In this document: piece by piece, positions 1-63,083 of the stretch
How positions within the stretch are numbered: the first letter of the stretch is position 1
Layout: each line of letters begins with the position of its first letter
Source of the DNA: Macrostomum lignano
Lineage: Eukaryota
Reading direction: 5' to 3'
NCBI GenBank assembly: GCA_002269645.1
Contig: NIVC01000778.1
Coordinates: 1-64,000, forward strand
DNA length: 64,000 bases
The notes under the pieces: model-generated
The model's input: only the letters and a program-made list of their open reading frames with translations
Told to the model about the DNA's origin: nothing
Database searches by the model: none
Made by a program: the position numbers and the translations under genes

Positions 1-3000
1 TCCCTCCGGGGTGGCATCCCTTAACTTTTGCTTCTGCGGTGCTGCGCTGGCTTCCCTTAACTTTAGGTTCTCTCGCAATCGCAGTTTTGTCTAACTGGCT
101 GGCGGCAATTTCTTTAACTGAATTTGGCACTACAGCTAAATTGTCCCTATGCACTAACAACTCTTTCCCTTCTAGCTTTCCTTCTTCCTCCTTCTGCACC
201 TTAAATACTACTTCTGAAATTTGCTTCAAAACTCGGTATGCTGATCTTCGCTGTCTATGGAATTTATGCGACTCCTCGTTATCTAGCTGCGGGTTATTAA
301 TAAGCACTAAACTTCCTAACGGTACTTCCTTTGGCAGTTTGCTAGTTTCAGCAGCGGTCTGTCTTTGGTTTATCACCTTTTCCAATTTCTCTTTTACGAG
401 TTTCTGGGCGACATTTAGTCTTTCGGCATGTTCGGCAACATAGGATGGATAGCCTGCGTAGTGCTTTGGGTCCTTGATCTGATTGTCCATAGGTAACACG
501 GCTTCCCTTCCAAATAACAGGAAATGGGGTGTGAAACCTGTTGTCTGATTGATACTGGTTCGGACAGCAACTAGCGCAGCTGGAATCATTAGATCCCAGT
601 TATTGTGGTCTTTCTTGATAAGGCAGGTAATAATAGACTTGATCTGCTTATTGAACCTTTCTACCAAGCCGTTGCTCTGGGCATGGTAGGGGTAGTGAAT
701 GTCTGCTTGACATTATAGAGTTCACAGAAAGCCTTGAACTGTCTGCTGGGGAATGTTTTACCATTATCGGTATGAATCCAGTGGCACTGTCCATACTCAC
801 TGAAGATTCTCTCCTGCAGGATTTTAATGACAGTGTCTGATTTCTGGTTGCGGATCGGAAAGGCAAAGGGGTATCGCGTGGTGCTATCAACCACTGTGAG
901 CACATATCGATGCCCTCTTCTACTCTGCTTGGATATTGGCCCGATTATGTCAATATGGAGGCGGTGAAATGGCTCGCTGATAGGGAAGGACTGGATGGGG
1001 GCTTGGACCTTGTGTCCTCGTTTGCTTTCCAGGCAGGGTATACATTCAGAGATGTACTTCTCAACTGCCGTGTTCAGACCGGGTCTCCAAAATCTCTCGC
1101 GGACTTTCTGGATGGTCTTGTCTCTGCCTAAGTGTCCAGCTAGTGGGCTATCGTGGAGATCGCCAAGAACTAGCCTGTCTAATGACTCTGGCAGGACAAC
1201 CTTCCAATTTTCGTCCTCTTTCACGATTAACAATTCGTTTTCAATTCTCATAGCCTCATAGGCTTTGCACATTTGCTTTAACAGCGGGGGGTTGGTTCTC
1301 TGGGGCACTGGGATTTCAACTTTCGCACATTTCCATTGCACGAGGGTTCGGATCGAGGGGTCCTCTCTCTGGGCATTAACAATTTGGTCACGCTTCAGCG
1401 GGACGGGGAGGTAGTCAGTCAAGAGCTTATCGACTCTTCGCACCTCGCTCTCTTGTTCGTGTTTGGACATTACAGGGATTTGGCTCGATTGCGCAAGGCT
1501 CAAGCTCAGTGGCTCCAAATTGTTATCCTGAACACAATTACAAGGGGAGAGGGCTGGGGGACTGAATGGCATGGGGGCTGGGCGGCTAAATGGTTCAGCG
1601 AGAGGGGGGTTGGAGCAGGACAGTCGGGTATTGAGTCCTCAACTGGCAGCTGGGCCTGGCTTGTACAGCTGTCCTCTGCCTTTGCCTTCTGACTCAGTTC
1701 GGCCAATTCGGCTCTGTTGGGGGAGGGAAATTCTGGGTTGGCATTATCGCCTTTAGTCACCAATTCAGTGTTTGACTTATCACTCTGGCCTGTTTCGGCT
1801 GTCTCCGGGGTCTCCTAGACAAGCTGTCCGCGTTGGTATGCTTGGCGCCACTTCTGTGTTCAATGTCAAACTGAAACTCAGTCAGGCGCTCAATCCAACG
1901 TCCTAAGATACCCTGGGCTTCAGTCTGCCATAGCAACCAGAGGATTGCTTTATGGTCAGTTCGGGCGAGAAATCTTTTTCCGATCAAATAGAAACGAAAA
2001 TGTCTCATAGCGTCTACAAGTGCTAACAACTCCTTTCAAGTGATAGGGTAGCACTTTTCCGACTCTTTCATTGCGCGGCTAAAGTACGCAATAGGCCTTT
2101 CAATACCATCGGACTGGATCTGACCTAAACGGGCCCCAATCCGTCCTTCACTGGCATCGGTATCCAGAACCATTTTGACATTTTTGTCATCTACGAATTC
2201 AGGATACGCAAGCACCTCTGTTGACATCATGCGCTGTTTTAATGATTCAAAAGCCTTATCATGCACATCTGTCCATTTTGCTGAGAAATTTTGCACTCCC
2301 TTTCGGGTGAGCTGGAACAGTGGGTGCGCGGCTTCAGCATAGTTTTTCACGAATCGACTGTAATAATTACACAGTCCTAAAAAGCTACGTAGCTCTTTCA
2401 CCTCTTTCAGTTTAGGCCAGCTTTTGATCGCTTCGATCTTTGCTTCGTCACTTCGAATACCATCTCTACCTATCACGTGGCCTAAATACTTCAGCTCTCT
2501 ATGGAACAAATTGCACTTTTTCGCTCTAAGCTTCAATCCGGCATTGATTAGTCTCTGGAAAACTTCTTTCAAATGGGACAAATGGTCTTCGAACTGTTTT
2601 GAATAAGTGACAATATCGTCAATATAGGACATAGCAAACTTGTGCTGAATTCCAGCGAGTACTAAGTTCATTAGCCTCTGAAAGGTACCGGGAGCATTGG
2701 ATAGTCCCTGCGCCATCACCTGGTACTCAAACTGTCCTCTAGTCAGGGTGGAGAAAGCTGTCATGAACTTATGTTCTTCCTTAATTGGGACCTGCCAATA
2801 GCCTGAGTTAAGATTGAGGCTACTGAAGAATTGGCTTCCTGTGAGATTAGAGAAGGTTTCTTGGATGTTTGGGAGAGGGTAGGGGAAATAGTTCACTCGC
2901 GAGTTTAACACTCGGAAATCGTTGACAATGCGAATGGTGCCATCTTTCTTTGGCACGATGACTAGTGGGGTGGAATAGGTGGAATAGCAGGGACGGATGA

Positions 3001-4460
3001 GATTTTTCGCTAGCATATCGTCTAGCTGGGCGTCGACCTGCTTTTGGAGATGGGGAGGAATTCGGCGAGTAGGGATTCTCACAAGGGGTCTCGTCTTTCA
3101 AAGAAATTTCTTGGGTCACTAAATGAGTTAGCCCCATATCGAGGTCATTTTGAGAGAAAGCTTCTCGATGCTCTTTTACTAATGCTACTACTGCTGCTCT
3201 CTGTTCAGTAGTCAAATCAGTACCAATGCTAATTTCACTCACCCTTTCTTCTTCAGTGGCTTGGACCTGATTGACACGGGCTGAGTCTTGTACTTCCGCT
3301 GATGGCTGCTGATCAGATGTCGGTGCTGACCAATAGAGCAGATCTTTGGCCTTCATGGGCTTAGCGAGCCCTACCAATGCAGATTTGGGCAACCTGACTT
3401 CAATGGGGTGCCAATTCACAATTTCGACGACTGCGGCGCCCTGCTGCATGGTGACCAGAGTCGGGATCATTTCAATCGTTAGCTCTTTGGCTCTTACGCC
3501 ATCACCAATTGTTTCTATAGTCATTGGAGCGCCATAGTTAGCTTCGGCATTCTCCACCAGTCTAACTGGAATGCGCAGTGCGCTATTCGCAGGGATAATT
3601 GCCTTTTCTTGAGTGTACACTCTGCAGACTCGTACAGGCATGTGCGTGTACTGCATAGGTATGCAGGCTCCTTCTTTTAGGATCAGCATCCCTTTTGTCA
3701 GATGAATGCTTTCGCACTGCTCAAGAAAGAATTCCATTCCCAAAATGTTGTCACATTCGTGGCCACATAATAGGAACATTATTTCAATTCGAATATCTCC
3801 AAACTCAACAGCAACGGAAATTTCTCCTTCTAGCTGTACTGTGGCTCCGTCAAAAGTAGATACTCTTCTACTTGTACTCTTGATTTGCTTAGGCTTGAAA
3901 ATTTTAGACCAGACTGACTTACTCAGGAAATTATTGCTAGCTCCAGTATCTAGCAGGAAGTCAATCTCTTGGCGATTGATGTTGCCTACTACGATTGCTT
4001 CGTAGCTCTTGGGGCTGATTAGCTCGAGTTTGGCATTGGCTGGAGTCTTCTTGGATTTGCGGCGGCGGTTTCGACGCGACTTCTTGGGCTTGACAGTCAT
4101 CAGCGTGATGACTGAGGTCTCGGCGGTTGACACATTGGGCGAAGTAAGCAATTGGGATGCTGCGGCAGCAGATGCGGGTGCTGCAGCAGCGGGTGCTGAT
4201 ACTGTAGACATAGATGATGCAGGCATAGTAGACGCAGTTGGTGCAGACATAGTGGACGCAGTTGGTGCATTTCGCATAGATACAGGGTGCATTTTCGCAT
4301 TGGGTGCATAAGCATTTCGCTTGCGCCTTTTTACAAGTTGCCATCCTCCGTTTGCTGTATCACAAGCGGGTTGGCGGGGATTTTGGGAGGCCTGCATTTC
4401 GCTTGGGGTTCTGCTTGAGGGATATGGCCTCGACTTCCGACCCTCGCCATTCAGTTTCCC
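1..4460 (-). pseudogene. Gypsy pol (protease, RT, RNase H, integrase), disrupted
   Basis: The ORF pieces 2847-4397, 2036-3082, 1757-2029, 661-1572 and an unlisted frame from about 525 to 1 join into one polyprotein. Lesions: 1-nt insertion near 3083, in-frame TGA at YPIT*KELLA (about 2036), frameshifts near 1760, 1570, 690 and 525, and the first RT catalytic Asp read as N (FSSLNLNSGYWQ). Confidence 0.92.
4418..4460 (-). promoter_or_regulatory. Putative -1 programmed ribosomal frameshift signal (G GGA AAC) with downstream structured RNA
   Basis: The minus strand reads cag GGA AAC TGA. The X XXY YYZ heptamer is in the gag frame, directly before the gag stop, and the -1 frame is the open protease frame. 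It is followed by complementary blocks ATGGC/GCCAT and GAGGG/CCCTC. Confidence 0.75.
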
Positions 4461-5416
4461 TGATTCAGGTTTCTTGGAGGAAATCGGTGCTGGTTGGGTC
4501 TAGCTGATGGTGGCTGAGACTGCGCTGGGAACCTGGGATGCTGGTTCATTAGTGGGGGTGGCCGTGGCTGATACGCCCTCGGCTGATAGCGCACATGCTG
4601 GGGCTAAGAAGCCATTTGCTGATATCGTACAGGCTGAGGCTGTACTATAGCAGGCTGATAATGCACTGGCTGAGTAGCCATTGGCTGATACACCTGCACC
4701 TTCTCTTTGTGGCTCTCCGCCTGTAGCTCCTGAATGAGTTTTCGCTGCTTTTCCAGCTCCTCTTTCTGCTTCTTGACGACTTCTGTCAGGCTCTCTTTCT
4801 CTCCTTCTTTGTCTTTAATCACTCTTACTCCATTCTTGTGGGACATGTGCCAAGCAGCTTCAATGCGCCTCAACATGCGCCTAGCTTCCTGCAGGCTAGC
4901 TGGCTGCGCAAAAATCAGCTTCTCCCTTGTATCTGAGGGGATTCTGACACCTTTTATGAATTGTTCTACCACTTCTTCTTCTCTTTGCTTGGCATTCATG
5001 TTTGGGAATGCTTGGCTTGACAGCTCTATCAGGGCATCAGCGAACATGTCGGTCGCCTCATTTCTTCCCTGCATCCTTCCTCTAAATTCTTCACTGAACT
5101 CGGAAGCACTTCCTAGCCTACCAAATCTTTCTACAAGCCTATCCTTAAACTCCTCATAGGTCAACTCTTCTGGCAAATTCAATCGCTGAACTGCAGCGAA
5201 AGCAGTTGACAAGTCCAAATTAGCTATTAACTCAGTTTTCCTATTGGCTACGTCTATTCCTTTGGCGTCACATCGCTGATCAAAGGCTACCAGCCAGATT
5301 CAGATGTCTTGGCTGGGGGTATACTTCTGAATTTTAATATGTCTCATGGGCCCTAGTTCTAATCTATTCCTCAACTCTTCTGCTAATAGTCCAATAGTAT
5401 CATTGATTGCTGCCAT
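4451..5416 (-). pseudogene. Gypsy gag (about 321 aa), two premature stops
   Basis: ATG at 5416 opens MAAINDTIGLL...; in-frame TGA at 5300-5302 and TAG at 4604-4606. A capsid-like core (FRGRMQGRNEATDMFADALIELSSQAFP...EQFIKG) is followed by a Q/P-rich tail ending NLNQGN* at 4451. Confidence 0.88.
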
Positions 5417-5498
5417 GGCTTATTCCAAGTCTATAATTTCTCTTTGTCAATTCGACTTTTTCAGCAATATCAGGTCTTTTCACTGGATCTCGATCCCT

Positions 5499-5670
5499 TT
5501 CCGCTGCCACCAAGTTGTGGTAGGGCACCTTTTATTATTCTCTAAATCCCACCGCAATCACCAAGTTGTGGGAGGTGGATTTAATTATTATAACTATCCC
5601 ACCGATGCACCAAGTTGTTACCGGTCTCTTTACTGTTATTGAATTTTATCTCACTGTGCTACCAAGTTGT
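5499..5670 (-). promoter_or_regulatory. Array of four primer-binding-site-like units (ACAACT-TGGT-variable)
   Basis: Plus-strand ACCAAGTTGT occurs at 5509, 5560, 5609 and 5661. On the minus strand the units read TGGTAGCACAG, TGGTGCATCGG, TGGTGATTGCGG and TGGTGGCAGCGG. Two match recalled tRNA-Gly(GCC) and tRNA-Leu(AAG/TAG) 3' ends exactly over 11-12 nt. Confidence 0.8.
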
Positions 5671-6318
5671 TGAAGGGGGGGGGTTTGGCTGTAATTCTAG
5701 AATTTTATTATATTAGCTTATTGAATTCGTTATGAACTACTAAAATACGATGTTACTGAGGTAAGGCTATGGGCTTTCACGTAAGCACAGATTGCCCTGG
5801 TAGCGCGCAGTGCCCGAGCGGCAAGACACTGTTCAGCTAGGGGGGGAGGGGGATGACTAAGTCCTAAAGCAGCGTCCTCCAATGGATCGAGTTTGCCCAG
5901 TGAATTTCAATTTCCTCTTACGGATTTTCTTTTGTCATATACGACTTTCCATTGGTTGTTCAGTTCGAACAGTTTATTTGGATATTTCTCCCTCTTCAAT
6001 TGGCTCTCTACGCCTTTACTGTTCGCAGTTCCGCTATTGGCTTTTAGACTGTTTGTCTTTTGCTCTTGGTAATTTCTACCTCTTGTCCAATGAGCATTCG
6101 CTCTCAGCTTTTGGCAAATAAGGAAGACTTTGAAAGATTCTTCAAATTTTGTTAGGCAAATCGCCTATGAACCTGAAAACTCGGTTGCCTCTCTGGGCGC
6201 TGAATTCCCTTCTATTTATACGAAAATTGGGGTGGGGACGGGTGCATTCAAACAAAATTCTACAAACTTCATAGTTACTAAGAAAACGGCAGGGATTCAA
6301 AACTTGGCCTCTCTCACA
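5668..6318 (-). repeat. Putative 5' LTR (about 650 bp)
   Basis: The minus strand begins TGTGAG at 6318 and ends TTCAACA at 5668, 3 nt before the first PBS. It contains TATAAATA at about 6213-6220 and AATAAA at about 5704-5709. Composition turns sharply AT-rich beyond 6318. The 3' LTR is outside the window, so the boundary is unconfirmed. Confidence 0.55.
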
Positions 6319-7785
6319 TATAATTTCTTTTTATTAGCACTTTTTGTTTGCTGATGTATTGATGGCTTTTTAATTAATGAACCTTTATATTGTGTTTTCT
6401 ATGAAACAGATCAAATACAAGTTTTACTAGTCTTTTTTAAATAGAAAATTACTGATTTTTGCATTTTTTCTAAAAGTTGTGGTATAGCCTATTAAAACTT
6501 TCTTGATAGGATTTATTCTAATGCAGGCATGTTATGATCTTGACTATGATATGAGACTATAATTGGGCATATTTTCTTTGGCATTCTAGATTATTTTCTT
6601 GCATTTCTAGATTGACAATTTAGCAATTTGTTTCACTTTCCTGCTTTAGACTAGGCTACTATGCTGTATGGCTCATTGATTTTTTATTTTGACTTTTAGT
6701 TTTTTTCCTTATTATTTTTTTATTCTTTAGACCTACTGGTAAAGCAAAAAATCTAGAAAATAAGGCCTAATTTAGAGTGGGAAACTAAAGTTAAATAAAA
6801 AACAATATAGATAGCATAGGTCTATAGTTAGACTAATAGAATAAGTGCAGGTTGTTTTGGGGACAGACATTTTGGTAAAAAAATATAAATAGTTGTTTTG
6901 ATAACCTTTGTTTTTTAAAAGGCCATAGTTTGGAAGGCAACATGTATGCTAGGATTTCCTAGTGTATAACAAGGGTATCAGCCATTTTTAGTGTACATTA
7001 GCATATATCCTAGTATATATGACAGTGGAAACAGTTGTCAATAATATATTTGTTTAGTCCCAGTGTACAAACAAGGTCTCATTTTTTCTAGCATTCAACC
7101 AATTGTATACTAATACACAATATGAACTATGGTAAAAAGGAAATATTTGGTTAATGGTCAACTGGTCATTTTAAATGATAGGCATATAATAATTATAAAG
7201 TTAAAATTGATCCATCTAGCTTTGAAGGCTGTCCTGATTGTAGTACTACTTTTCATTATATCTCCTATTCTAATGATCTAACTAATATCATTTTGCACAA
7301 AATTATAGCAGCAACTCTCTCTATATTAACTTTAATATCTTCAAAATCAGACAATTGAAAACATATAGAAGAGTTTGACTATAAACTTATAATAAGTCAA
7401 CAAATCAACAAAAAGTAGGAGCAAAGCAAAAAGTAGCAAGATAAGCAACATATTATGACATGACAATTTAAAATATTGAGCTATTGTGTGGCAGTTTTTT
7501 CTATATTTTAAATAAAAACTTAAATGTAGATTTAGATAAAATAAATATAAATATAAATAAAAAATGATGAAACTAAGAAAATTGTATTTATACTATATAA
7601 ACAATGAGTACTTTAGGAAACTTGCCTTAGTAATAAAATGATGCCCTAAAATTGGTATTAGTAAGTTCTTTTTCACCACTCCCAAAAAGAAAAGGAAAAA
7701 TGATGGGTTTTAAAAAAAGTTTTTAAGGAAAGAAAGGTTCAAGTTTTTTAAAATGAGAGCCATTTAATTTACTATATATCCTTAA

Positions 7786-8787: not shown

Positions 8788-11700
8788 ATGGCGTCAGTTC
8801 GATTTCTACGCAGCGCCACTAGCGTAGGAGCCATTCGCTTCGCTTGCTATCAGGCTCGCAGCTTTTGCTCCGGTGGTGGTGGACTCAGTGCCGCCGCTGC
8901 TACTGCCACTGAATCTGCCGGGTCTAGCGGTGCTTCGCTTCAACACGCCGATCAAGGCGTTGAAGCTGGCGGTATTTTAAATGCAGCCAAATATGGCGGC
9001 CGACACCACGTGTCGCTGATTCCTGGCGACGGGATCGGGCCGGAATTGATGGACTCGGTTAAAACCATAGTTAATGTAGCCGGATCGCCCATTGATTTCG
9101 AGGAGATACCGCTGTCTGCCGAGCGAGGCACAGACGAGGACATGCGCAGGGCTATACTGTCTATTAAACGAAATGGCGTGGGGCTGAAAGGAAATTTAGA
9201 AACTTTTGAAGGTAAGTTTCAATAAATTGATAGTTTAAGGCCTTAAGCTACTATTAGTAGAGTAGCATGCTTTCTAATGCGAGTGAAAAGTGAGTCAATT
9301 GATTATATAGGGTTATTGGTTCTTGTCAATTGAAATAATTAATCAGGGGTCGCCAAAATTTTTACATTGATGTGCAGATGAAGAACCTTGCTAATAATGG
9401 CCTCGGGCCAGTGGAGAGAGGAAAGAAGAAGGAATAGAGGAGAAAAGGGAAAGGAGACGAGGGATGATAGAAGAGAGGAAAGGCGAGAAAGGAGATAAAA
9501 GGAGAGATGAGATATTTGATATAAGAGAAAAGAAGGACTTTGGATAAGGATGAAAGATGAAATGAGAGAAGAGATGAGAAAGATAAAGAAAAGAGAGGAG
9601 AGAACAGAAGAAGGGCGAGAGGAGAGAAAAGCGGCCAGAGTAGAGGGGGGAGAGAGAAGATAAGAGAGCTCAAAAGAGACACAAACCCTGAGCAGGCCGA
9701 ATTGCCGTTATGAAGTTTCAAAGGACCCGGTGGCCGGAATTTGCTGACCCTTGACATAAAATGAATCATGGTTTTGCATCAACATTTACTCTTCGCTGCT
9801 TCAGTACTGCTCGTCTAACTCTGGTGTTTTATTAGCTAATGGTTTTTTGTTGCAAAGTACTTGTCGTAATTTATAATAGTAAGAGGGTAGTTAATTATTC
9901 AATAAGGCAATTAAATCTGTGTTACTTTAAATTTTACTTATCCTACAGCTAACACTGACTACACTGTTATGGGAGGTGAGTTGTTAAATGTACTTATCTT
10001 ACCAGATGCTGTTAGTTATTGCAGGCTTTGGAATTTTTTCTGTTAGTACAAAATGTTTGATACATTTATAGCAGAGGTCAGCCAGCTCCGCATGCGTAGC
10101 CTCTCTATCCGGCCCCGCTCAAGGCTTATTTGTCATCTCAGCTCTCTTCTCTTTTTTTCTTTCCTATCCTCTCATCCCCCTCTCCCCTCTCCTCTCTCCG
10201 GCTCAGACCGGATAAGCTCAGACAGTGTAGTATTGTAATAACTTCTAGACGAATTGAAGATGTTTAATTCTATTTTACATTCCATTGATAAAGATTCAAA
10301 TTTTATAAGCCTTACCGCAAAGGATAAAGTAGTTTACGTAATAACTTATCAAGATAGACGTAAAGGATATTCTAGAAAAAAATTATGACATATGACAAGC
10401 TTGAATGCTTGTCCTGAGGCTTCAGGTTAGTTGGTACCCAAAATGCTTGAGCCCCTCAGTCCTTGGACTGAACAGCCGTGTTTTGTATTTTTTCACCGCC
10501 TCATTTTATTTTCTAATCTTTTAAAATTAATTTTCGTTCTGTTAATTGTTTTGTATTGCAAATTTATATATCATTTTTAGTAATCTAAGCATTCCCCCTC
10601 CCAAGCCTTGACATCTTAGCAATTCCCCCTCCCAAGCCTTGACATCTTAGCAATTCCCCCTCCCAAGCCTTGACATCTTAGCAATTCCCCCTCCCAAGCC
10701 TTGACATCTTAGCAATTCCCCCTAAGCCTTGACATCTCAGCAATTCCCCCTCCCAAGCCTTGACATCTTAGCAAAACCCCCTCCCAAGCCTTGACATCTA
10801 AGCAATTCCCCCTCCCAAGCCTTGACATCTAAGCAATTCCCCCTCCCAAGCCTTGACATCTAAGCAACTCCCCCTCCCAAGCCTTGACATCTAAGCAATT
10901 CCCCCTCCCAAGCCTTGACATCTAAGCATTCCCTCCAAGCCTTGACATCTAAGCATTCCCTCCAAGCCTTGACATCGAAGCAATCCCCCTCCCAAGCCTT
11001 GACATCTCAGCAATCCCCCTATATGCCTTGACTTCACAACATTTAGCTCTTTAAGGTTTATTTTTAGTATATAGAAGTATGTTGAAAACACCAATTTGTA
11101 ATTGAATAATGCAATTAATTTTTTAATTAGGCATGACATCGAAGAATGTTCAGCTCCGAACTAAGCTGGACCTGTTCGCCTATGTACAGCGCTGTAAATC
11201 TATCGAAGGTGTGCCGTCTCGTTACAGCGACATTGACATACTGGTTATACGCGAGAACACGGAAGGTGAATACAGCCAATTGGAGCATTTCAACGTGCCT
11301 GGCGTTGTTGAAAGCTTTAAAATTATCACTGAAGCTAAGAGTCGACAGATTGCTAAGTTTGCCTTCGATACGGCTATTAAAACTAGGCGCCATCGCGTCA
11401 CGGCGGTGCACAAGGCCAATATTATGAAACTATCCGACGGCCTGTTCTTAGACGTCTGTCGAGATGTCGCTCGCGACTATCCTAGCATTGAGTTTAACGA
11501 TGTTATAGTTGACAATTGTTGCATGCAGCTGGTTGCTAGGCCGCAACAATTCGATATAATGGTATTGCCGAATCTCTATGGCAATATAATTGGCAATATT
11601 GCCGCCGGTTTAGTTGGCGGTCCCGGCGTAGCCGCTGGTATGAATATTGGACGTAAATACGCCGTATTCGAGGCTGGTACGAGAAATTCTGGCAGATCAA

Positions 11701-13491: not shown

Positions 13492-13790
13492 GACATTGTC
13501 ACTCAACCGGCGAGAGGCATTGCTGCCCCCATTCCGCCGACTCCCCCTGAGCAGGCACACAAGCGCGCGGATACGTACGCAGTCATACGCACAGGCACAC
13601 ACTCACAGGTGTACAGCGGCCCTAACTTTATTTATCGTTAGGCATGTACACTTTGCTGTGCCTTGGGGGTTGGCCCTCAAGCTGGGCGTTAATTGCACGA
13701 GCAGAGCCAAGCCGAGATTCCAATTCAGCCCCAAATTAATGCGACTGCACTTGGAATCGAGCCTGGGCCGCTGGCACATTAGAGTGCTGC
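13492..13790 (-). mobile_element. tRNA-derived SINE family A, 5'-clipped copy
   Basis: Reverse complement of the 37442-37790 copy, including the B-box GGCTCGATTCC. Confidence 0.9.
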
Positions 13791-37441: not shown

Positions 37442-37790
37442 GTGCCGTAGCCCAGTGGTCCAGCGCGGCGCTTTGATGTGCCAGCGGCCCAGGCTCGATT
37501 CCAAGTGCAGTCGCATTAATTTGGGGCTGAATTGGAATCTCAGCTTGGCTCTGCTCGTGCAATTAACGCCCAGCTTGAGGGCCAACCCCCAAGGCACAGT
37601 GAAGTGTACATGCCTAACGATAAATAAAGTTAGGGCCGCTGTACACTCCTGTGTGTGCCTGTGCGTATGACTGCGGAAGTATCCGCGCGCTTGTGTGCCT
37701 GCTCAGGGGAGTCGGTGGAATGGGCAGCAATGCCTCTCGCCGGTTGAGTGACAATGTCGCTTAAAGTGCTCCAGGGTGCTCACAGCCTCC
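37442..37790 (+). mobile_element. tRNA-derived SINE family A, full-length copy
   Basis: A-box TAGCCCAGTGG (37448), B-box GGCTCGATTCC (37492) and a body of about 290 nt shared by at least five other copies in the window. Confidence 0.9.
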
Positions 37791-37971: not shown

Positions 37972-43644
<5,673 letters not shown>

Positions 43645-46504: not shown

Positions 46505-46735
<231 letters not shown>

Positions 46736-47588
46736 TGTCGATCTATCTATTTCATTTATCTTCTTGTGTATGTTCTATCTCTCTCTCCCTCTCTCTCTTT
46801 CAGTCTTCCAGCTTCGCTATCATTTCTCCTTTGTTTGTTTGTCTTTTATTCTTTTTTAATGCGCCACCTGGGACTGCAATTTTAGCTAAGACAAAATTGA
46901 ATGCTTTATAGAAACAAAATTACATACTTGTACAGAATATAACTTGAATAAATTTCCTTCAAATAAAATGACACGTTAAGGACGCGCGAATGAATAGGTA
47001 CAAAAGCATGTATTTTTCCGTTTTGGGATTATTTGCTTTAATTTTCTTTTGTTTATATGTATTCATATCCAGCAAGAAGCATGTTAGTGCCATGGATTTT
47101 TCTTATGAGTGAAAGTCTTTCTTGTTATTTTGTTATTCTACGGATTCTCGCGTGTTTCGCTTGTTTGGCTTTGATTTAATTGATGTCAAGGCCTTGGACA
47201 CGCGTAAATGATTAGTGTAATAAAATATGAGCTAAGTCTTCTCATCTTGCAAGCTATACTCTAGCGTTATTATTATAGTTATATCTAGCTAGTCTGTGAA
47301 TTTATGGTCTTTTTGCACGACGGCAGAGTTGGATTATGAGGGGCTGTGTTTTTCCTCTCGGCTGTTTGTACCTACCTATATCTTAGGAGTCCTAATGCAT
47401 TAGATTCTCTAGCTGATCACGCGTCTTATTAGCAGTCACAGAAAGTTTTCCTTTTAGTAGAGATAAATTATTTGATGCATTATTCCGTAAGCTCTTCATT
47501 TGGAAAAATAAACTTTCTTCTCTACTATAGTCTCCGGAGAGTACTGTTCGTGACAAATTGATTAATTAACTACTAAATGCTATTATGA

Positions 47589-47933: not shown

Positions 47934-63083
<15,150 letters not shown>

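What the first reader, a model, noticed from the sequence alone, without database searches (positions are those of the whole stretch)
5499..5670. Four-unit primer-binding-site array: a Gypsy leader that appears able to use several different tRNAs, each with its own LTR-end-like site
Seen: the minus strand carries ACAACT-TGGT four times at 52, 49 and 51 nt spacing. The next 7 nt differ each time: AGCACAG, GCATCGG, GATTGCG, GGCAGCG. The spacers are unrelated to each other but AT-rich, with an AATAA-like word and a distinct end (CCTTCAACA, CCGGTAACA, CTCCCACA, CTACCACA). Established: a PBS is TGG plus the complement of a tRNA 3' end, 2-3 nt after the LTR-terminal CA. From recalled tRNA sequences, TGGTGGCAGCGG matches tRNA-Leu(AAG/TAG), TGGTGCATCGG matches invertebrate tRNA-Gly(GCC), and TGGTAGCACAG is one mismatch from initiator tRNA-Met (TGGTAGCAGAG). 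The third unit is unassigned but is tRNA-shaped over 16 nt (CCCAC-CGCAATC-A-CCA). Inference: this is not an ordinary tandem repeat, because only the functional junction is constant while the tRNA-complementary part is swapped. Priming at any unit would give a cDNA end with a correct ACA att-like site. The array could be a multi-primer cassette that broadens tissue or host range or evades 3'-tRF silencing. Alternatively it could be an accreting record of past primers or of related elements' U5-PBS junctions captured at strand transfer. I know of no description of this but could not check the literature.
Basis: partly seen in the sequence, partly recalled or inferred. Interest (0 to 1): 0.9.

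Follow-up and report, generated by a model that had tools for sequence, protein, structure and literature searches.

The report
Stack of decayed tRNA-Leu primer sites
The four repeats are real, but they are four mutated copies of one primer-binding site for leucine tRNA in a dead flatworm-type Gypsy retrotransposon, and only the copy next to gag is still intact, so this looks like a fossil record of repeated duplication and not a device for using several different tRNAs.

Summary
ACAACTTGGT occurs four times on the minus strand (5670-5661, 5618-5609, 5569-5560, 5518-5509), against 0.13 expected.

The multi-tRNA reading does not hold.
- All four units, and the four orthologous units of the only relative found (Logan contig L001, gag 75% identical), align over 18-20 nt to the complement of the 3' end of tRNA-Leu(AAG). 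Their consensus is that primer-binding site (PBS).
- The "variable" 7-mers are GGCAGCG with one to three changes.
- Only the gag-proximal unit keeps an unbroken match (12 nt here, 13 in L001), and only it is identical in both elements.
- Predicted pairing with tRNA-Leu weakens steadily upstream.
- A fifth, older relic lies at 5884-5799. It resembles a full-length antisense tRNA-Leu.
- Its 3' part, complementary to tRNA-Leu nt 1-7 and 11-18, holds the best-conserved non-coding 16-mer.

Best reading: tRNA-Leu primes at unit 4, and the upstream units are decaying duplicates of the U5-end/PBS junction, probably inside U5.

Still open: the LTR end, because no 3' LTR was available; the host tRNA set; why the junction is uniform within each element; and an 11-nt match of unit 2 to insect-type tRNA-Gly(GCC). 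The copy carries premature stop codons and a frameshift.

The parts
5501..5512 (-). Intact primer-binding site of unit 4: TGGTGGCAGCGG, complementary to the last 12 nt of tRNA-Leu(AAG/TAG)+CCA
   Evidence: It is an exact 12-nt complement of tRNA-Leu-AAG nt 74-85. L001 has 13 nt. It is the second-best conserved non-coding 16-mer between the window and L001, at 15/16. Continuous BLAST homology with L001 starts 14 nt upstream of it.
5467..5518 (-). Unit 4: junction ACAACT, the PBS, and a T-arm-like tail (GGGATCGAGATCC)
   Evidence: Predicted duplex with the tRNA-Leu 3' 25 nt is -37.4 kcal/mol, the strongest of all units.
5519..5569 (-). Unit 3: ACAACT plus TGGTGATTGCGGTGGGATT, a Leu PBS with three adjacent substitutions, plus spacer
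   Evidence: 15 of 18 positions match the Leu PBS. The exact 11-mer GCGGTGGGATT equals tRNA nt 67-77. Duplex -30.5 kcal/mol.
5570..5618 (-). Unit 2: ACAACT plus TGGTGCATCGGTGGGAT, a Leu PBS with one deletion and one substitution; also 11 nt contiguous with insect-type tRNA-Gly(GCC)
   Evidence: Duplex with tRNA-Leu -26.4 kcal/mol. The ortholog in L001 is TGGTGGCATCGATCGGAT.
5619..5670 (-). Unit 1: ACAACT plus TGGTAGCACAGTGAGAT, a strongly decayed Leu PBS, plus spacer
   Evidence: Duplex -16.2 kcal/mol, close to the shuffled background of -13.4 +/- 3.0. It shares derived changes (CAGTGAGA) with L001 unit 1.
5799..5884 (-). 'Unit 0': an ~85-nt relic resembling a full-length antisense tRNA-Leu. 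It begins CA-T-TGGAGGACGCTG and ends CGCTACC.
   Evidence: A global alignment to the reverse complement of tRNA-Leu-AAG+CCA gives 57 of 85 identical positions, z = 4.3, reached by 0 of 1000 shuffles. The L001 ortholog gives 56 identical, z = 3.9, reached by 2 of 1000. This is the best 85-nt window in scans of 2.1 kb and 1.1 kb, at orthologous places; opposite-strand controls score lower. Leu-AAG is clearly best among 13 tRNAs. Rfam does not detect it.
5799..5829 (-). Conserved block GTGTCTTGCCGCTCGG...CGCTACC, complementary to tRNA-Leu nt 11-18 (D arm) and nt 1-7 (5' acceptor strand)
   Evidence: The exact complements are at 5821-5814 and 5805-5799, and at L001 641-648 and 656-663. The 16-mer at 5829-5814 is 16/16 identical in L001, the best-conserved non-coding 16-mer. 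It is the only significant BLAST patch upstream of unit 4 (E = 8e-4).
5885..6420 (-). LTR-like upstream region with a TATA-like TATAAATA near 6218. Its 5' boundary was not determined.
   Evidence: It aligns only in short patches with L001. No second copy is in the window, so neither LTR end could be fixed.
4487..5416 (-). gag: ATG at 5416-5414, with an in-frame TGA at codon 39 (5302-5300) and a further stop at 4606-4604
   Evidence: See the translation and tblastn with P0001 (66% identity, single frame). Homologs are P0001 and Macrostomum lignano A0A1I8IYI7.
661..4397 (-). pol: protease (ORF 2847-4397), RT and RNase H (2036-3082), integrase (661-1572), broken by a frameshift near 3083. The element runs off the left edge of the window.
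   Evidence: Pfam hits and tblastn with the L001 pol, which changes frame at 3084/3082.

Best explanation
The array is a stack of tandem duplicates of one module. The module is the last nucleotides of U5 (...CCCTACC-ACAAC), one T, and a PBS complementary to the 3' end of cytoplasmic tRNA-Leu(AAG/TAG) (TGGTGGCAGCGGTGGGAT).

Only the gag-proximal copy (unit 4, 5512-5501) is still a working-grade PBS. tRNA-Leu anneals there and primes minus-strand strong-stop DNA. If so, units 1-3 and the older full-length antisense-tRNA relic at 5884-5799 belong to U5. They would be copied into both LTRs and decay as passengers.

The most likely origin (inferred) is as follows. During plus-strand strong-stop synthesis the reverse transcriptase read past the normal stop in the primer tRNA and copied it as antisense DNA. 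The nascent end ...CTACC then re-paired with the similar ...CTACC at the end of U5. Synthesis went on through ACAACT and a PBS again. Each such event adds a fresh unit next to the active PBS and pushes older ones upstream.

The conserved block complementary to tRNA-Leu nt 1-18 may have been kept as an auxiliary contact for the primer. This is an inference, made by analogy with Ty1, Ty3 and Gypsy.

Shown: common tRNA-Leu ancestry of all units, conservation of unit 4 only, presence of the array in a second element, and the gradient of decay. Inferred: the LTR boundary, the duplication mechanism and any present function of the upstream units.
For: 1. Every unit of both elements aligns to the reverse complement of the tRNA-Leu-AAG 3' end. 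Matches out of 18 by manual count from the gapped alignments: W1 about 13-14, W2 16 with one gap, W3 15, L1 14-15, L2 15, L3 15; W4 and L4 have 12 and 13 unbroken matches. The consensus of the eight units reads TGGTGGCAGCGGTGAGAT. The tRNA sequence was taken from PMC10359600 and PMC9161985.
2. Leu-AAG beats all 14 other tRNA 3' ends for seven of the eight units, ties for best at L1, and is clearly best for unit 0.
3. Units are orthologous between the window and L001. Shared derived changes are CAGTGAGA in unit 1, CATCG in unit 2 and GTAACAA before unit 2. Yet units 1-3 differ from each other at several PBS positions, while unit 4 is identical.
4. Predicted pairing with tRNA-Leu falls monotonically upstream: -37.4, -30.5, -26.4, -16.2, -10.0 kcal/mol in the window and -31.5, -25.1, -23.5, -22.7 in L001. 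Shuffled tails give -13.4 +/- 3.0.
5. The two best-conserved non-coding 16-mers between the elements are both complementary to tRNA-Leu.
6. Continuous nucleotide homology starts at unit 4. Upstream there are only short patches, as expected if the LTR ends there.
7. Unit 0 is supported.
8. The TGG complements the CCA end, which by established tRNA biology is added after transcription in eukaryotes. The units therefore derive from mature tRNA by reverse transcription, not from a captured tRNA gene.
9. tRNA-Leu priming with short PBSs 4 nt from the LTR end is documented in other flatworm Gypsy-type elements (PMC4558846). Read-through of the primer tRNA when the m1A58 stop fails is documented for HIV-1 (PMC8599865).
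Against: 1. No 3' LTR, solo LTR or third family member could be obtained, so the LTR end is not fixed. The claim that units 1-3 lie in U5 is untested.
2. TTGGT is intact in all eight units, and the full 10-mer is identical four times in the window, whereas the following 14 positions of the six pseudo-units match the Leu PBS at only about 77% (manual count; ascertainment bias applies). The base before TTGGT is C in all four window units and T in all four L001 units. Passive decay does not predict this. It needs homogenisation or selection on the junction.
3. Four units are kept in two elements whose gag proteins are only 66-75% identical. This hints at a constraint on unit number.
4. Unit 2 has an 11-nt unbroken match to insect-type tRNA-Gly(GCC), which is PBS-grade length. 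Drosophila Gypsy uses 11 nt (PMC1635307).
5. Units 2 and 3 of the window keep CGGTGGGAT perfectly, while their L001 orthologs do not.
6. The tRNA sequences used are human and insect, not from the host.
7. Rfam and ARAGORN see no tRNA-like sequence. Unit 0 rests on alignment statistics only.
Confidence: 0.6

Rival explanations
1. Several units are live initiation sites for the same tRNA-Leu. The primer can anneal at units 2-4, through 5-8 terminal base pairs plus the T-stem part, and reverse transcription can start at any of them. Each junction must then keep a CA plus 3 nt plus TGGTG so that the resulting LTR end is a usable integrase substrate. The result would be LTRs with U5 of variable length.
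For: The junction is better conserved than the rest of each unit and is uniform within each element. Units 3 and 2 of the window are predicted to bind tRNA-Leu well (-30.5 and -26.4 kcal/mol against a background of -13.4) and keep a perfect CGGTGGGAT. Four units are retained in both elements. From my own knowledge, retroviral vectors engineered with two PBSs do initiate at both.
Against: Only 5 terminal base pairs are unbroken in W2, W3 and L1, and 7-8 in L3 and L2. In retroviruses, use of a site tends to copy the tRNA sequence back into it, yet units 1-3 keep old mutations shared between the two elements. This argument is weakened because Ty1 does not inherit the primer sequence (my own knowledge). 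Units 1-3 differ freely between the two elements, whereas unit 4 does not.
Confidence: 0.15
2. One reading: a multi-primer cassette in which each unit is tuned to a different tRNA (initiator Met, Gly-GCC, an unknown tRNA, and Leu).
For: Unit 2 matches insect-type tRNA-Gly(GCC) over 11 unbroken nt from the 3' end. That 3' end exists in the literature for Drosophila and a moth. Unit 3 is in register with a canonical T stem. The host tRNA set could not be examined, so host-specific tRNAs cannot be excluded.
Against: All units are nearest to the Leu PBS. The Gly match stops at the acceptor stem, and the rest is Leu-type, out of register by one base. Unit 1 has only 8 unbroken nt with initiator Met (read directly from the sequences). 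None of the alternative matches is kept in L001, where the units read GACAGCA, GGCATCG and GGCCGCG. The supposed poly(A)-like words are absent from L001.
Confidence: 0.05
3. The repeats are kept for another cis function that happens to reuse PBS-derived sequence. Candidates are repeated binding sites for the Gag nucleocapsid domain (packaging or dimerisation), docking sites that concentrate tRNA-Leu, decoys for 3' tRNA fragments that target PBSs, or DNA-level factor sites like the Su(Hw) array in the Drosophila gypsy leader.
For: The core (A)CAA-N-TTGGTG is invariant or nearly so in eight units, while its flanks drift. Unit number and order are conserved in two diverged elements. The location between LTR and gag is where packaging signals and the gypsy insulator lie (my own knowledge). 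The gag relative P0002 has a CCHC zinc knuckle.
Against: There is no direct evidence for any partner. No conserved hairpin was seen at the junctions by inspection of the sequences. The core is simply the part of a PBS that pairs with the universal CCA end. Only two sequences are available, so conservation statistics are weak and biased by how the units were recognised.
Confidence: 0.12

Closest known systems
Canonical tRNA primer-binding site of LTR retrotransposons and retroviruses, in particular tRNA-Leu-primed flatworm Gypsy-type elements (Echinococcus ta-TRIM and lennie, PMC4558846)
   Same: TGG plus the complement of a tRNA 3' end, placed a few nucleotides after the CA that ends the LTR. 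tRNA-Leu is the primer. The PBS is short: 8-9 nt in Echinococcus and 12-13 nt here.
   Different: Here the junction plus PBS is present four times in tandem, with an older fifth relic, instead of once. Three copies are mutated.
Bipartite or extended primer-template contacts: Ty3 5'/3' PBS, Drosophila Gypsy second tRNA-Lys site (PMC1635307), Ty1 boxes 0/1/2.1, HIV-1 primer activation signal
   Same: Extra template segments complementary to parts of the same primer tRNA other than its 3' end. The conserved block at 5829-5799 is complementary to tRNA-Leu nt 1-7 and 11-18.
   Different: In those systems the extra sites pair mainly with T, D or anticodon arms and were shown by experiment. Here the contact is only inferred from complementarity and conservation. 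It includes the 5' acceptor strand and appears to be the remnant of a copied tRNA.
Read-through of the primer tRNA during plus-strand strong-stop synthesis (m1A58 stop; PMC8599865) and retroviral vectors engineered with two PBSs (my own knowledge)
   Same: These supply the proposed source of antisense tRNA sequence next to a PBS, and the expected behaviour of a genome with more than one PBS.
   Different: Those are laboratory observations of aberrant or engineered products. Here the products would have been fixed repeatedly in a natural lineage.
Su(Hw) binding-site array in the Drosophila gypsy leader (my own knowledge)
   Same: A short motif repeated at regular spacing, separated by AT-rich spacers, just downstream of the 5' LTR of a Gypsy element.
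   Different: The motif here is PBS-derived. The AT-rich spacers are not conserved in the relative, and no binding factor is known.

Membership tests
Ty3/Gypsy (Metaviridae) LTR retrotransposon | pol domain order protease, reverse transcriptase, RNase H, integrase | tested here: met
   Pfam: gag-asp_proteas in ORF 2847-4397; RVT_1, RT_RNaseH_2 and RT_RNaseH in 2036-3082; Integrase_H2C2 and rve in 661-1572. All are on the minus strand in that order.
Ty3/Gypsy (Metaviridae) LTR retrotransposon | Two long terminal repeats flanked by a target-site duplication | not testable with these tools
   The element runs off the left edge of the window. No second LTR copy is in the window, and no other genomic copy could be fetched.
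Functional tRNA primer-binding site (unit 4) | TGG plus at least 8 unbroken nt complementary to the 3' end of a cytoplasmic tRNA | tested here: met
   12 nt in the window and 13 nt in L001 are complementary to tRNA-Leu-AAG+CCA. The tRNA sequence comes from PMC10359600 and PMC9161985. It is human, not host.
Functional tRNA primer-binding site (unit 4) | Conserved among family members | tested here: met
   TTGGTGGCAGCGG is identical in the window and L001, at 15/16 over the best 16-mer. Only two members were available.
Functional tRNA primer-binding site (unit 4) | Lies 0-5 nt after the CA that ends the 5' LTR | tested here: inconclusive
   A CA lies 3 nt upstream (ACA-ACT-TGG), but the LTR end cannot be fixed without a 3' LTR. 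Homology with L001 begins there, which is suggestive only.
Functional tRNA primer-binding sites (units 1-3) | At least 8 unbroken nt complementary to the 3' end of a tRNA | tested here: inconclusive
   With tRNA-Leu the unbroken match is 4-5 nt in W1-W3 and 5-8 nt in L1-L3. W2 has 11 nt with insect-type tRNA-Gly(GCC), and W1 has 8 nt with initiator Met by direct reading. Host tRNAs are unknown, and the panel had only 15 tRNAs.
Functional tRNA primer-binding sites (units 1-3) | Conserved among family members | tested here: not met
   The 7-mers differ between orthologous units: AGCACAG vs GACAGCA, GCATCGG vs GGCATCG, GATTGCG vs GGCCGCG.
Ordinary tandem repeat (satellite-like) | Head-to-tail copies with roughly uniform divergence, detectable by Tandem Repeats Finder | tested here: not met
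   TRF reports nothing at 5467-5670. Divergence is strongly uneven: 10/10 identity in the junction against 53% mean column identity over the units.
tRNA gene or Rfam tRNA family (unit 0) | Detected by ARAGORN or by the Rfam tRNA covariance model | tested here: not met
   ARAGORN finds no tRNA in the window. cmscan finds nothing up to E = 10 in window 5300-6400 or L001 1-1100. Unit 0 is a sequence relic, not a foldable tRNA.

The most novel reading that the evidence does not exclude
The stack is not only a fossil. In this flatworm Gypsy family, reverse transcription may start at any of several PBS units, using tRNA-Leu throughout and perhaps tRNA-Gly at unit 2 in this lineage. That would give LTRs whose U5 length varies with the unit used. 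The junctions would be kept uniform by co-evolution with the element's integrase. The relic of a copied tRNA upstream would serve as a second docking site for the 5' half of the primer. This would be a natural multi-initiation leader that renews itself by copying its own primer.
Probability: 0.12. Interest if true: 0.75.

Novelty: new variant of a known kind. Interest (0 to 1): 0.38.

Why it matters
If the main reading is right, this leader preserves in order several rounds of a rare reverse-transcription accident: copying of the primer tRNA followed by re-priming on the end of U5. It shows that such products can be fixed and tolerated inside U5. That bears on how LTR ends and PBSs evolve, and on how tRNA-derived sequence enters retroelements.

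There is also a practical point. Annotation tools that take the first TGG-type match after a presumed LTR end would place the LTR boundary and the primer tRNA wrongly in such families.

It does not show a new way of choosing primers.

The residual puzzles could interest specialists, but they rest on only two sequences. These puzzles are the junction being uniform within each element, four units being kept in two diverged elements, and a conserved block complementary to the 5' 18 nt of the primer.

Tried and rejected
1. Looked for a second copy or an LTR inside the window by self-BLAST. None was found. The repeat finder was swamped by a microsatellite.
2. Looked up the window's gag ORF and the M. 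lignano homolog P0002 in the contig index. Neither is on record.
3. Ran two gag protein searches, one with a single sequence and one with a profile. They found only P0001 and P0002. The RT search gave nothing closer than 60%. The contig of that hit (L002) and those of more distant hits (L003, L014-L016) either lack the 5' leader or show no LTR pair and no repeated TGG-containing 8-mer.
4. Scanned metagenomes with the gag profile and with a unit-4 DNA pattern. No relative turned up, only chance matches in bacteria plus one unrelated eukaryote-like contig.
5. Scanned viral and prokaryotic collections for the conserved 16-mer and the unit-4 pattern. Only chance matches were found.
6. Ran an Rfam scan at a permissive threshold. 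No hit.
7. A local alignment of the antisense tRNA with harsh gap costs was not clearly above shuffles. The global and windowed tests were.
8. Literature searches for natural tandem or multiple PBSs returned mostly 'phosphate-buffered saline' noise. The only relevant hit was the Gypsy/Ty3 bipartite PBS. The M. lignano LTR paper does not mention PBS or tRNA, and no supplement is held.
9. Capture of a tRNA gene was considered and rejected. The units include the complement of CCA, which is added after transcription (established tRNA biology).
10. The poly(A)-signal reading of the spacers was considered and rejected. The AATAA words are absent from L001.

Full report
**What is there**

On the minus strand the 10-mer ACAACTTGGT occurs four times and nowhere else in the 64-kb window. 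The positions are 5670-5661, 5618-5609, 5569-5560 and 5518-5509, with spacing 52, 49 and 51 nt. The chance expectation is 0.13. Tandem Repeats Finder does not see the array, and ARAGORN finds no tRNA gene in the window.

**The element**

Downstream on the same strand lie gag (ATG 5416-5414), protease, RT and RNase H, and integrase, in the Ty3/Gypsy order. The copy is dead:
- gag has an in-frame TGA at codon 39 (5302-5300), where relatives have Arg, and a further stop at 4606-4604;
- pol changes frame near 3083.

The element runs off the left edge of the window. No second copy or LTR is present in the window, so its LTR ends cannot be read directly.

**Relatives**

Protein searches found only two gag relatives. 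One is P0001, 75% identical, on the 4.6-kb Logan contig L001. The other is a Macrostomum lignano protein (66%), for which no contig is on record. The host is therefore probably a macrostomid-like flatworm, but this is not established. The nearest RT in the database is 60% identical. Scans of metagenomes, viral contigs and prokaryotic genomes gave no further member.

**The array is present in the relative**

L001 carries four units at the same place, about 95 nt before the gag ATG, with spacing 52, 64 and 49 nt. They read ATTTGGTG followed by ACAGCAG, GCATCGA, GCCGCGT and GCAGCGG.

The units are orthologous one to one. Shared derived features are CAGTGAGA in unit 1, CATCG in unit 2 and GTAACAA before unit 2. 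The array therefore predates the split of the two elements and is not a private accident of this copy.

Only unit 4 is the same in both. TTGGTGGCAGCGG is identical, whereas the 7-mers of units 1-3 differ.

**All units come from one tRNA**

The human tRNA-Leu-AAG-1-1 sequence and its 18-nt 3' fragment were taken from PMC10359600 and PMC9161985. The complement of its 3' end is TGGTGGCAGCGGTGGGAT.

Matches to that 18-mer, counted by hand from the gapped alignments, and predicted duplex energy with the last 25 nt of tRNA-Leu:

| Unit | Match to the Leu PBS | Duplex energy (kcal/mol) |
|---|---|---|
| W0 (relic) | not scored | -10.0 |
| W1 | about 13-14 of 18 | -16.2 |
| W2 | 16 of 18, one gap | -26.4 |
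| W3 | 15 of 18 | -30.5 |
| W4 | 12 unbroken | -37.4 |
| L1 | 14-15 of 18 | -22.7 |
| L2 | 15 of 18 | -23.5 |
| L3 | 15 of 18 | -25.1 |
| L4 | 13 unbroken | -31.5 |

Shuffled tails give -13.4 +/- 3.0 kcal/mol.

- A MAFFT alignment of the eight units has the consensus ACAACTTGGTGGCAGCGGTGAGAT.
- I compared the units with 13 human tRNAs from PMC10359600, plus insect Gly(GCC) and initiator Met. The 3' ends of the last two are attested in the literature. Leu-AAG is the best match for seven of the eight units and ties for best at L1.
The bases after them keep the Leu T-stem complement, and CGGTGGGAT is exact in W2 and W3.
- The Gly(GCC) match of W2 is real (11 unbroken nt) and is the second-best hit. 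But it is one deletion and one substitution from the Leu site, stops at the acceptor stem, and is absent from L2.

**A gradient of decay**

The duplex energies in the table fall monotonically with distance from gag in both elements. The oldest-looking copies are the farthest from the intact PBS.

**An older, full-length relic**

Exact complements of tRNA-Leu nt 11-18 (CCGCTCGG) and nt 1-7/8 ((A)CGCTACC) lie about 290 nt upstream of unit 4. They are in the same order in both elements.
- The surrounding 86 nt (5884-5799) align globally to the whole antisense tRNA-Leu+CCA with 57 of 85 identities (z = 4.3, 0 of 1000 shuffles).
- The L001 ortholog gives 56 identities (z = 3.9, 2 of 1000).
- In sliding scans this is the top window in both elements. 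Opposite-strand controls are lower.
- Leu-AAG scores far above 12 other tRNAs.
- The relic starts CA-T-TGG, like the other units.
- A harsher local alignment was not clearly significant, and Rfam sees nothing. I therefore hold this with moderate confidence.

The 16-mer GTGTCTTGCCGCTCGG inside it is 16/16 identical between the elements. It is the best-conserved non-coding 16-mer. The second best is unit 4.

**Where the LTR probably ends**

BLAST between the two elements gives one continuous match that starts 14 nt before the TGG of unit 4 and runs into gag. Upstream there are only short patches. This fits an LTR that ends at the ACA before unit 4, with units 0-3 inside U5. A fast-evolving leader would look similar, so the point is open.

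**Mechanism**

Established: a PBS pairs with the tRNA 3' end. Plus-strand strong-stop DNA copies the first 18 nt of the primer and normally stops at m1A58. Failure of that stop lets the enzyme copy further into the tRNA (PMC8599865). Flatworm Gypsy-type elements are known to use tRNA-Leu with short PBSs a few bases from the LTR end (PMC4558846).

Inferred: each unit ends in ...CC(C)TACC followed by ACAAC-T-TGGTG, and the antisense tRNA ends in ...CGCTACC. A plus strand that had copied the whole primer could re-pair through CTACC with the end of U5 and continue through ACAACT into a PBS again. That would add one unit next to the active site. Repetition, followed by internal deletion and point mutation, gives the observed stack and its age gradient. 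Because the units contain the complement of CCA, they come from mature tRNA and not from a captured gene.

**What this does not explain**

- TTGGT is intact in all eight units. The whole 10-mer is identical four times in the window. The base before TTGGT is C in all four window units and T in all four L001 units. With about 77% identity elsewhere in the pseudo-PBSs (my count), this points to homogenisation or selection on the junction. The way the units were recognised does bias this comparison.
- Both elements keep exactly four units.

These facts keep two rivals alive: multiple initiation by tRNA-Leu at several units, and another cis function of the repeated core.

**Comparison with known systems**

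The nearest known things are:
- the ordinary PBS;
- the auxiliary tRNA contacts of Ty1, Ty3 and Drosophila Gypsy (PMC1635307);
- laboratory observations of primer read-through and of engineered two-PBS vectors (the latter from my own knowledge).

I found no description of a natural tandem stack of PBS relics. However, the literature search was hampered by the abbreviation PBS and covers open-access papers only.

**Verdict**

The multi-tRNA interpretation is not supported. This is a new variant of a known kind and of moderate interest.

Noticed in passing
window 5799-5829 (minus); L001 633-663: GTGTCTTGCCGCTCGG...CGCTACC is the best-conserved non-coding stretch between the two elements. It is complementary to tRNA-Leu nt 11-18 and 1-7, so it may be an auxiliary contact for the primer.
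   Followed up: partly
window 5300-5302, 4604-4606 and about 3083 (minus): The copy is defective. It has an in-frame TGA at gag codon 39 where relatives have Arg, a second stop before the Q/P-rich gag tail, and a frameshift between the protease and RT parts of pol.
   Followed up: yes
window 4168-4269: Tandem repeats of 15 nt and 24 nt lie inside the coding region between gag and protease. They encode a repeated Ala/Ser/Thr/Pro-rich motif.
   Followed up: no
window 13598-13790, 37442-37664, 40926-41148: A repeat of about 200-220 nt is present three times at 93-94% identity, in both orientations. It looks like a small dispersed element (MITE- or SINE-like).
   Followed up: no
window about 51450-54000 and 46599-46757: A very long microsatellite-like array (period 4/8/12 nt, AT-rich, strong GC skew) has a 150-nt inverted partner about 4.8 kb away.
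   Followed up: no
window 8788-9225 (+): This ORF, with ...GGRHHVSLIPGDGIGPEL..., reads like the first exon of a mitochondrial NAD-isocitrate dehydrogenase subunit (my own reading; no Pfam hit). The element's LTR-like side faces this gene, about 2.4-3 kb away, across an AT-rich stretch.
   Followed up: no
L001 684-704: CCTGGTAATTCAGACTGCTACC, between unit 0 and unit 1 of the relative, looks like a further, heavily deleted antisense tRNA-Leu remnant (TGGT..ATTC.A..GACTG..CTACC). The window has a diverged counterpart near 5785-5770.
   Followed up: no
L007 1198-1220 (metagenome contig Ga0049107_10080518): An unrelated eukaryote-like contig has ...CATTGGTGGCAGCGGGAAAGGCATCC, probably the tRNA-Leu PBS of another LTR element, directly after a tRNA-like sequence that ends in ACCA.
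   Followed up: no
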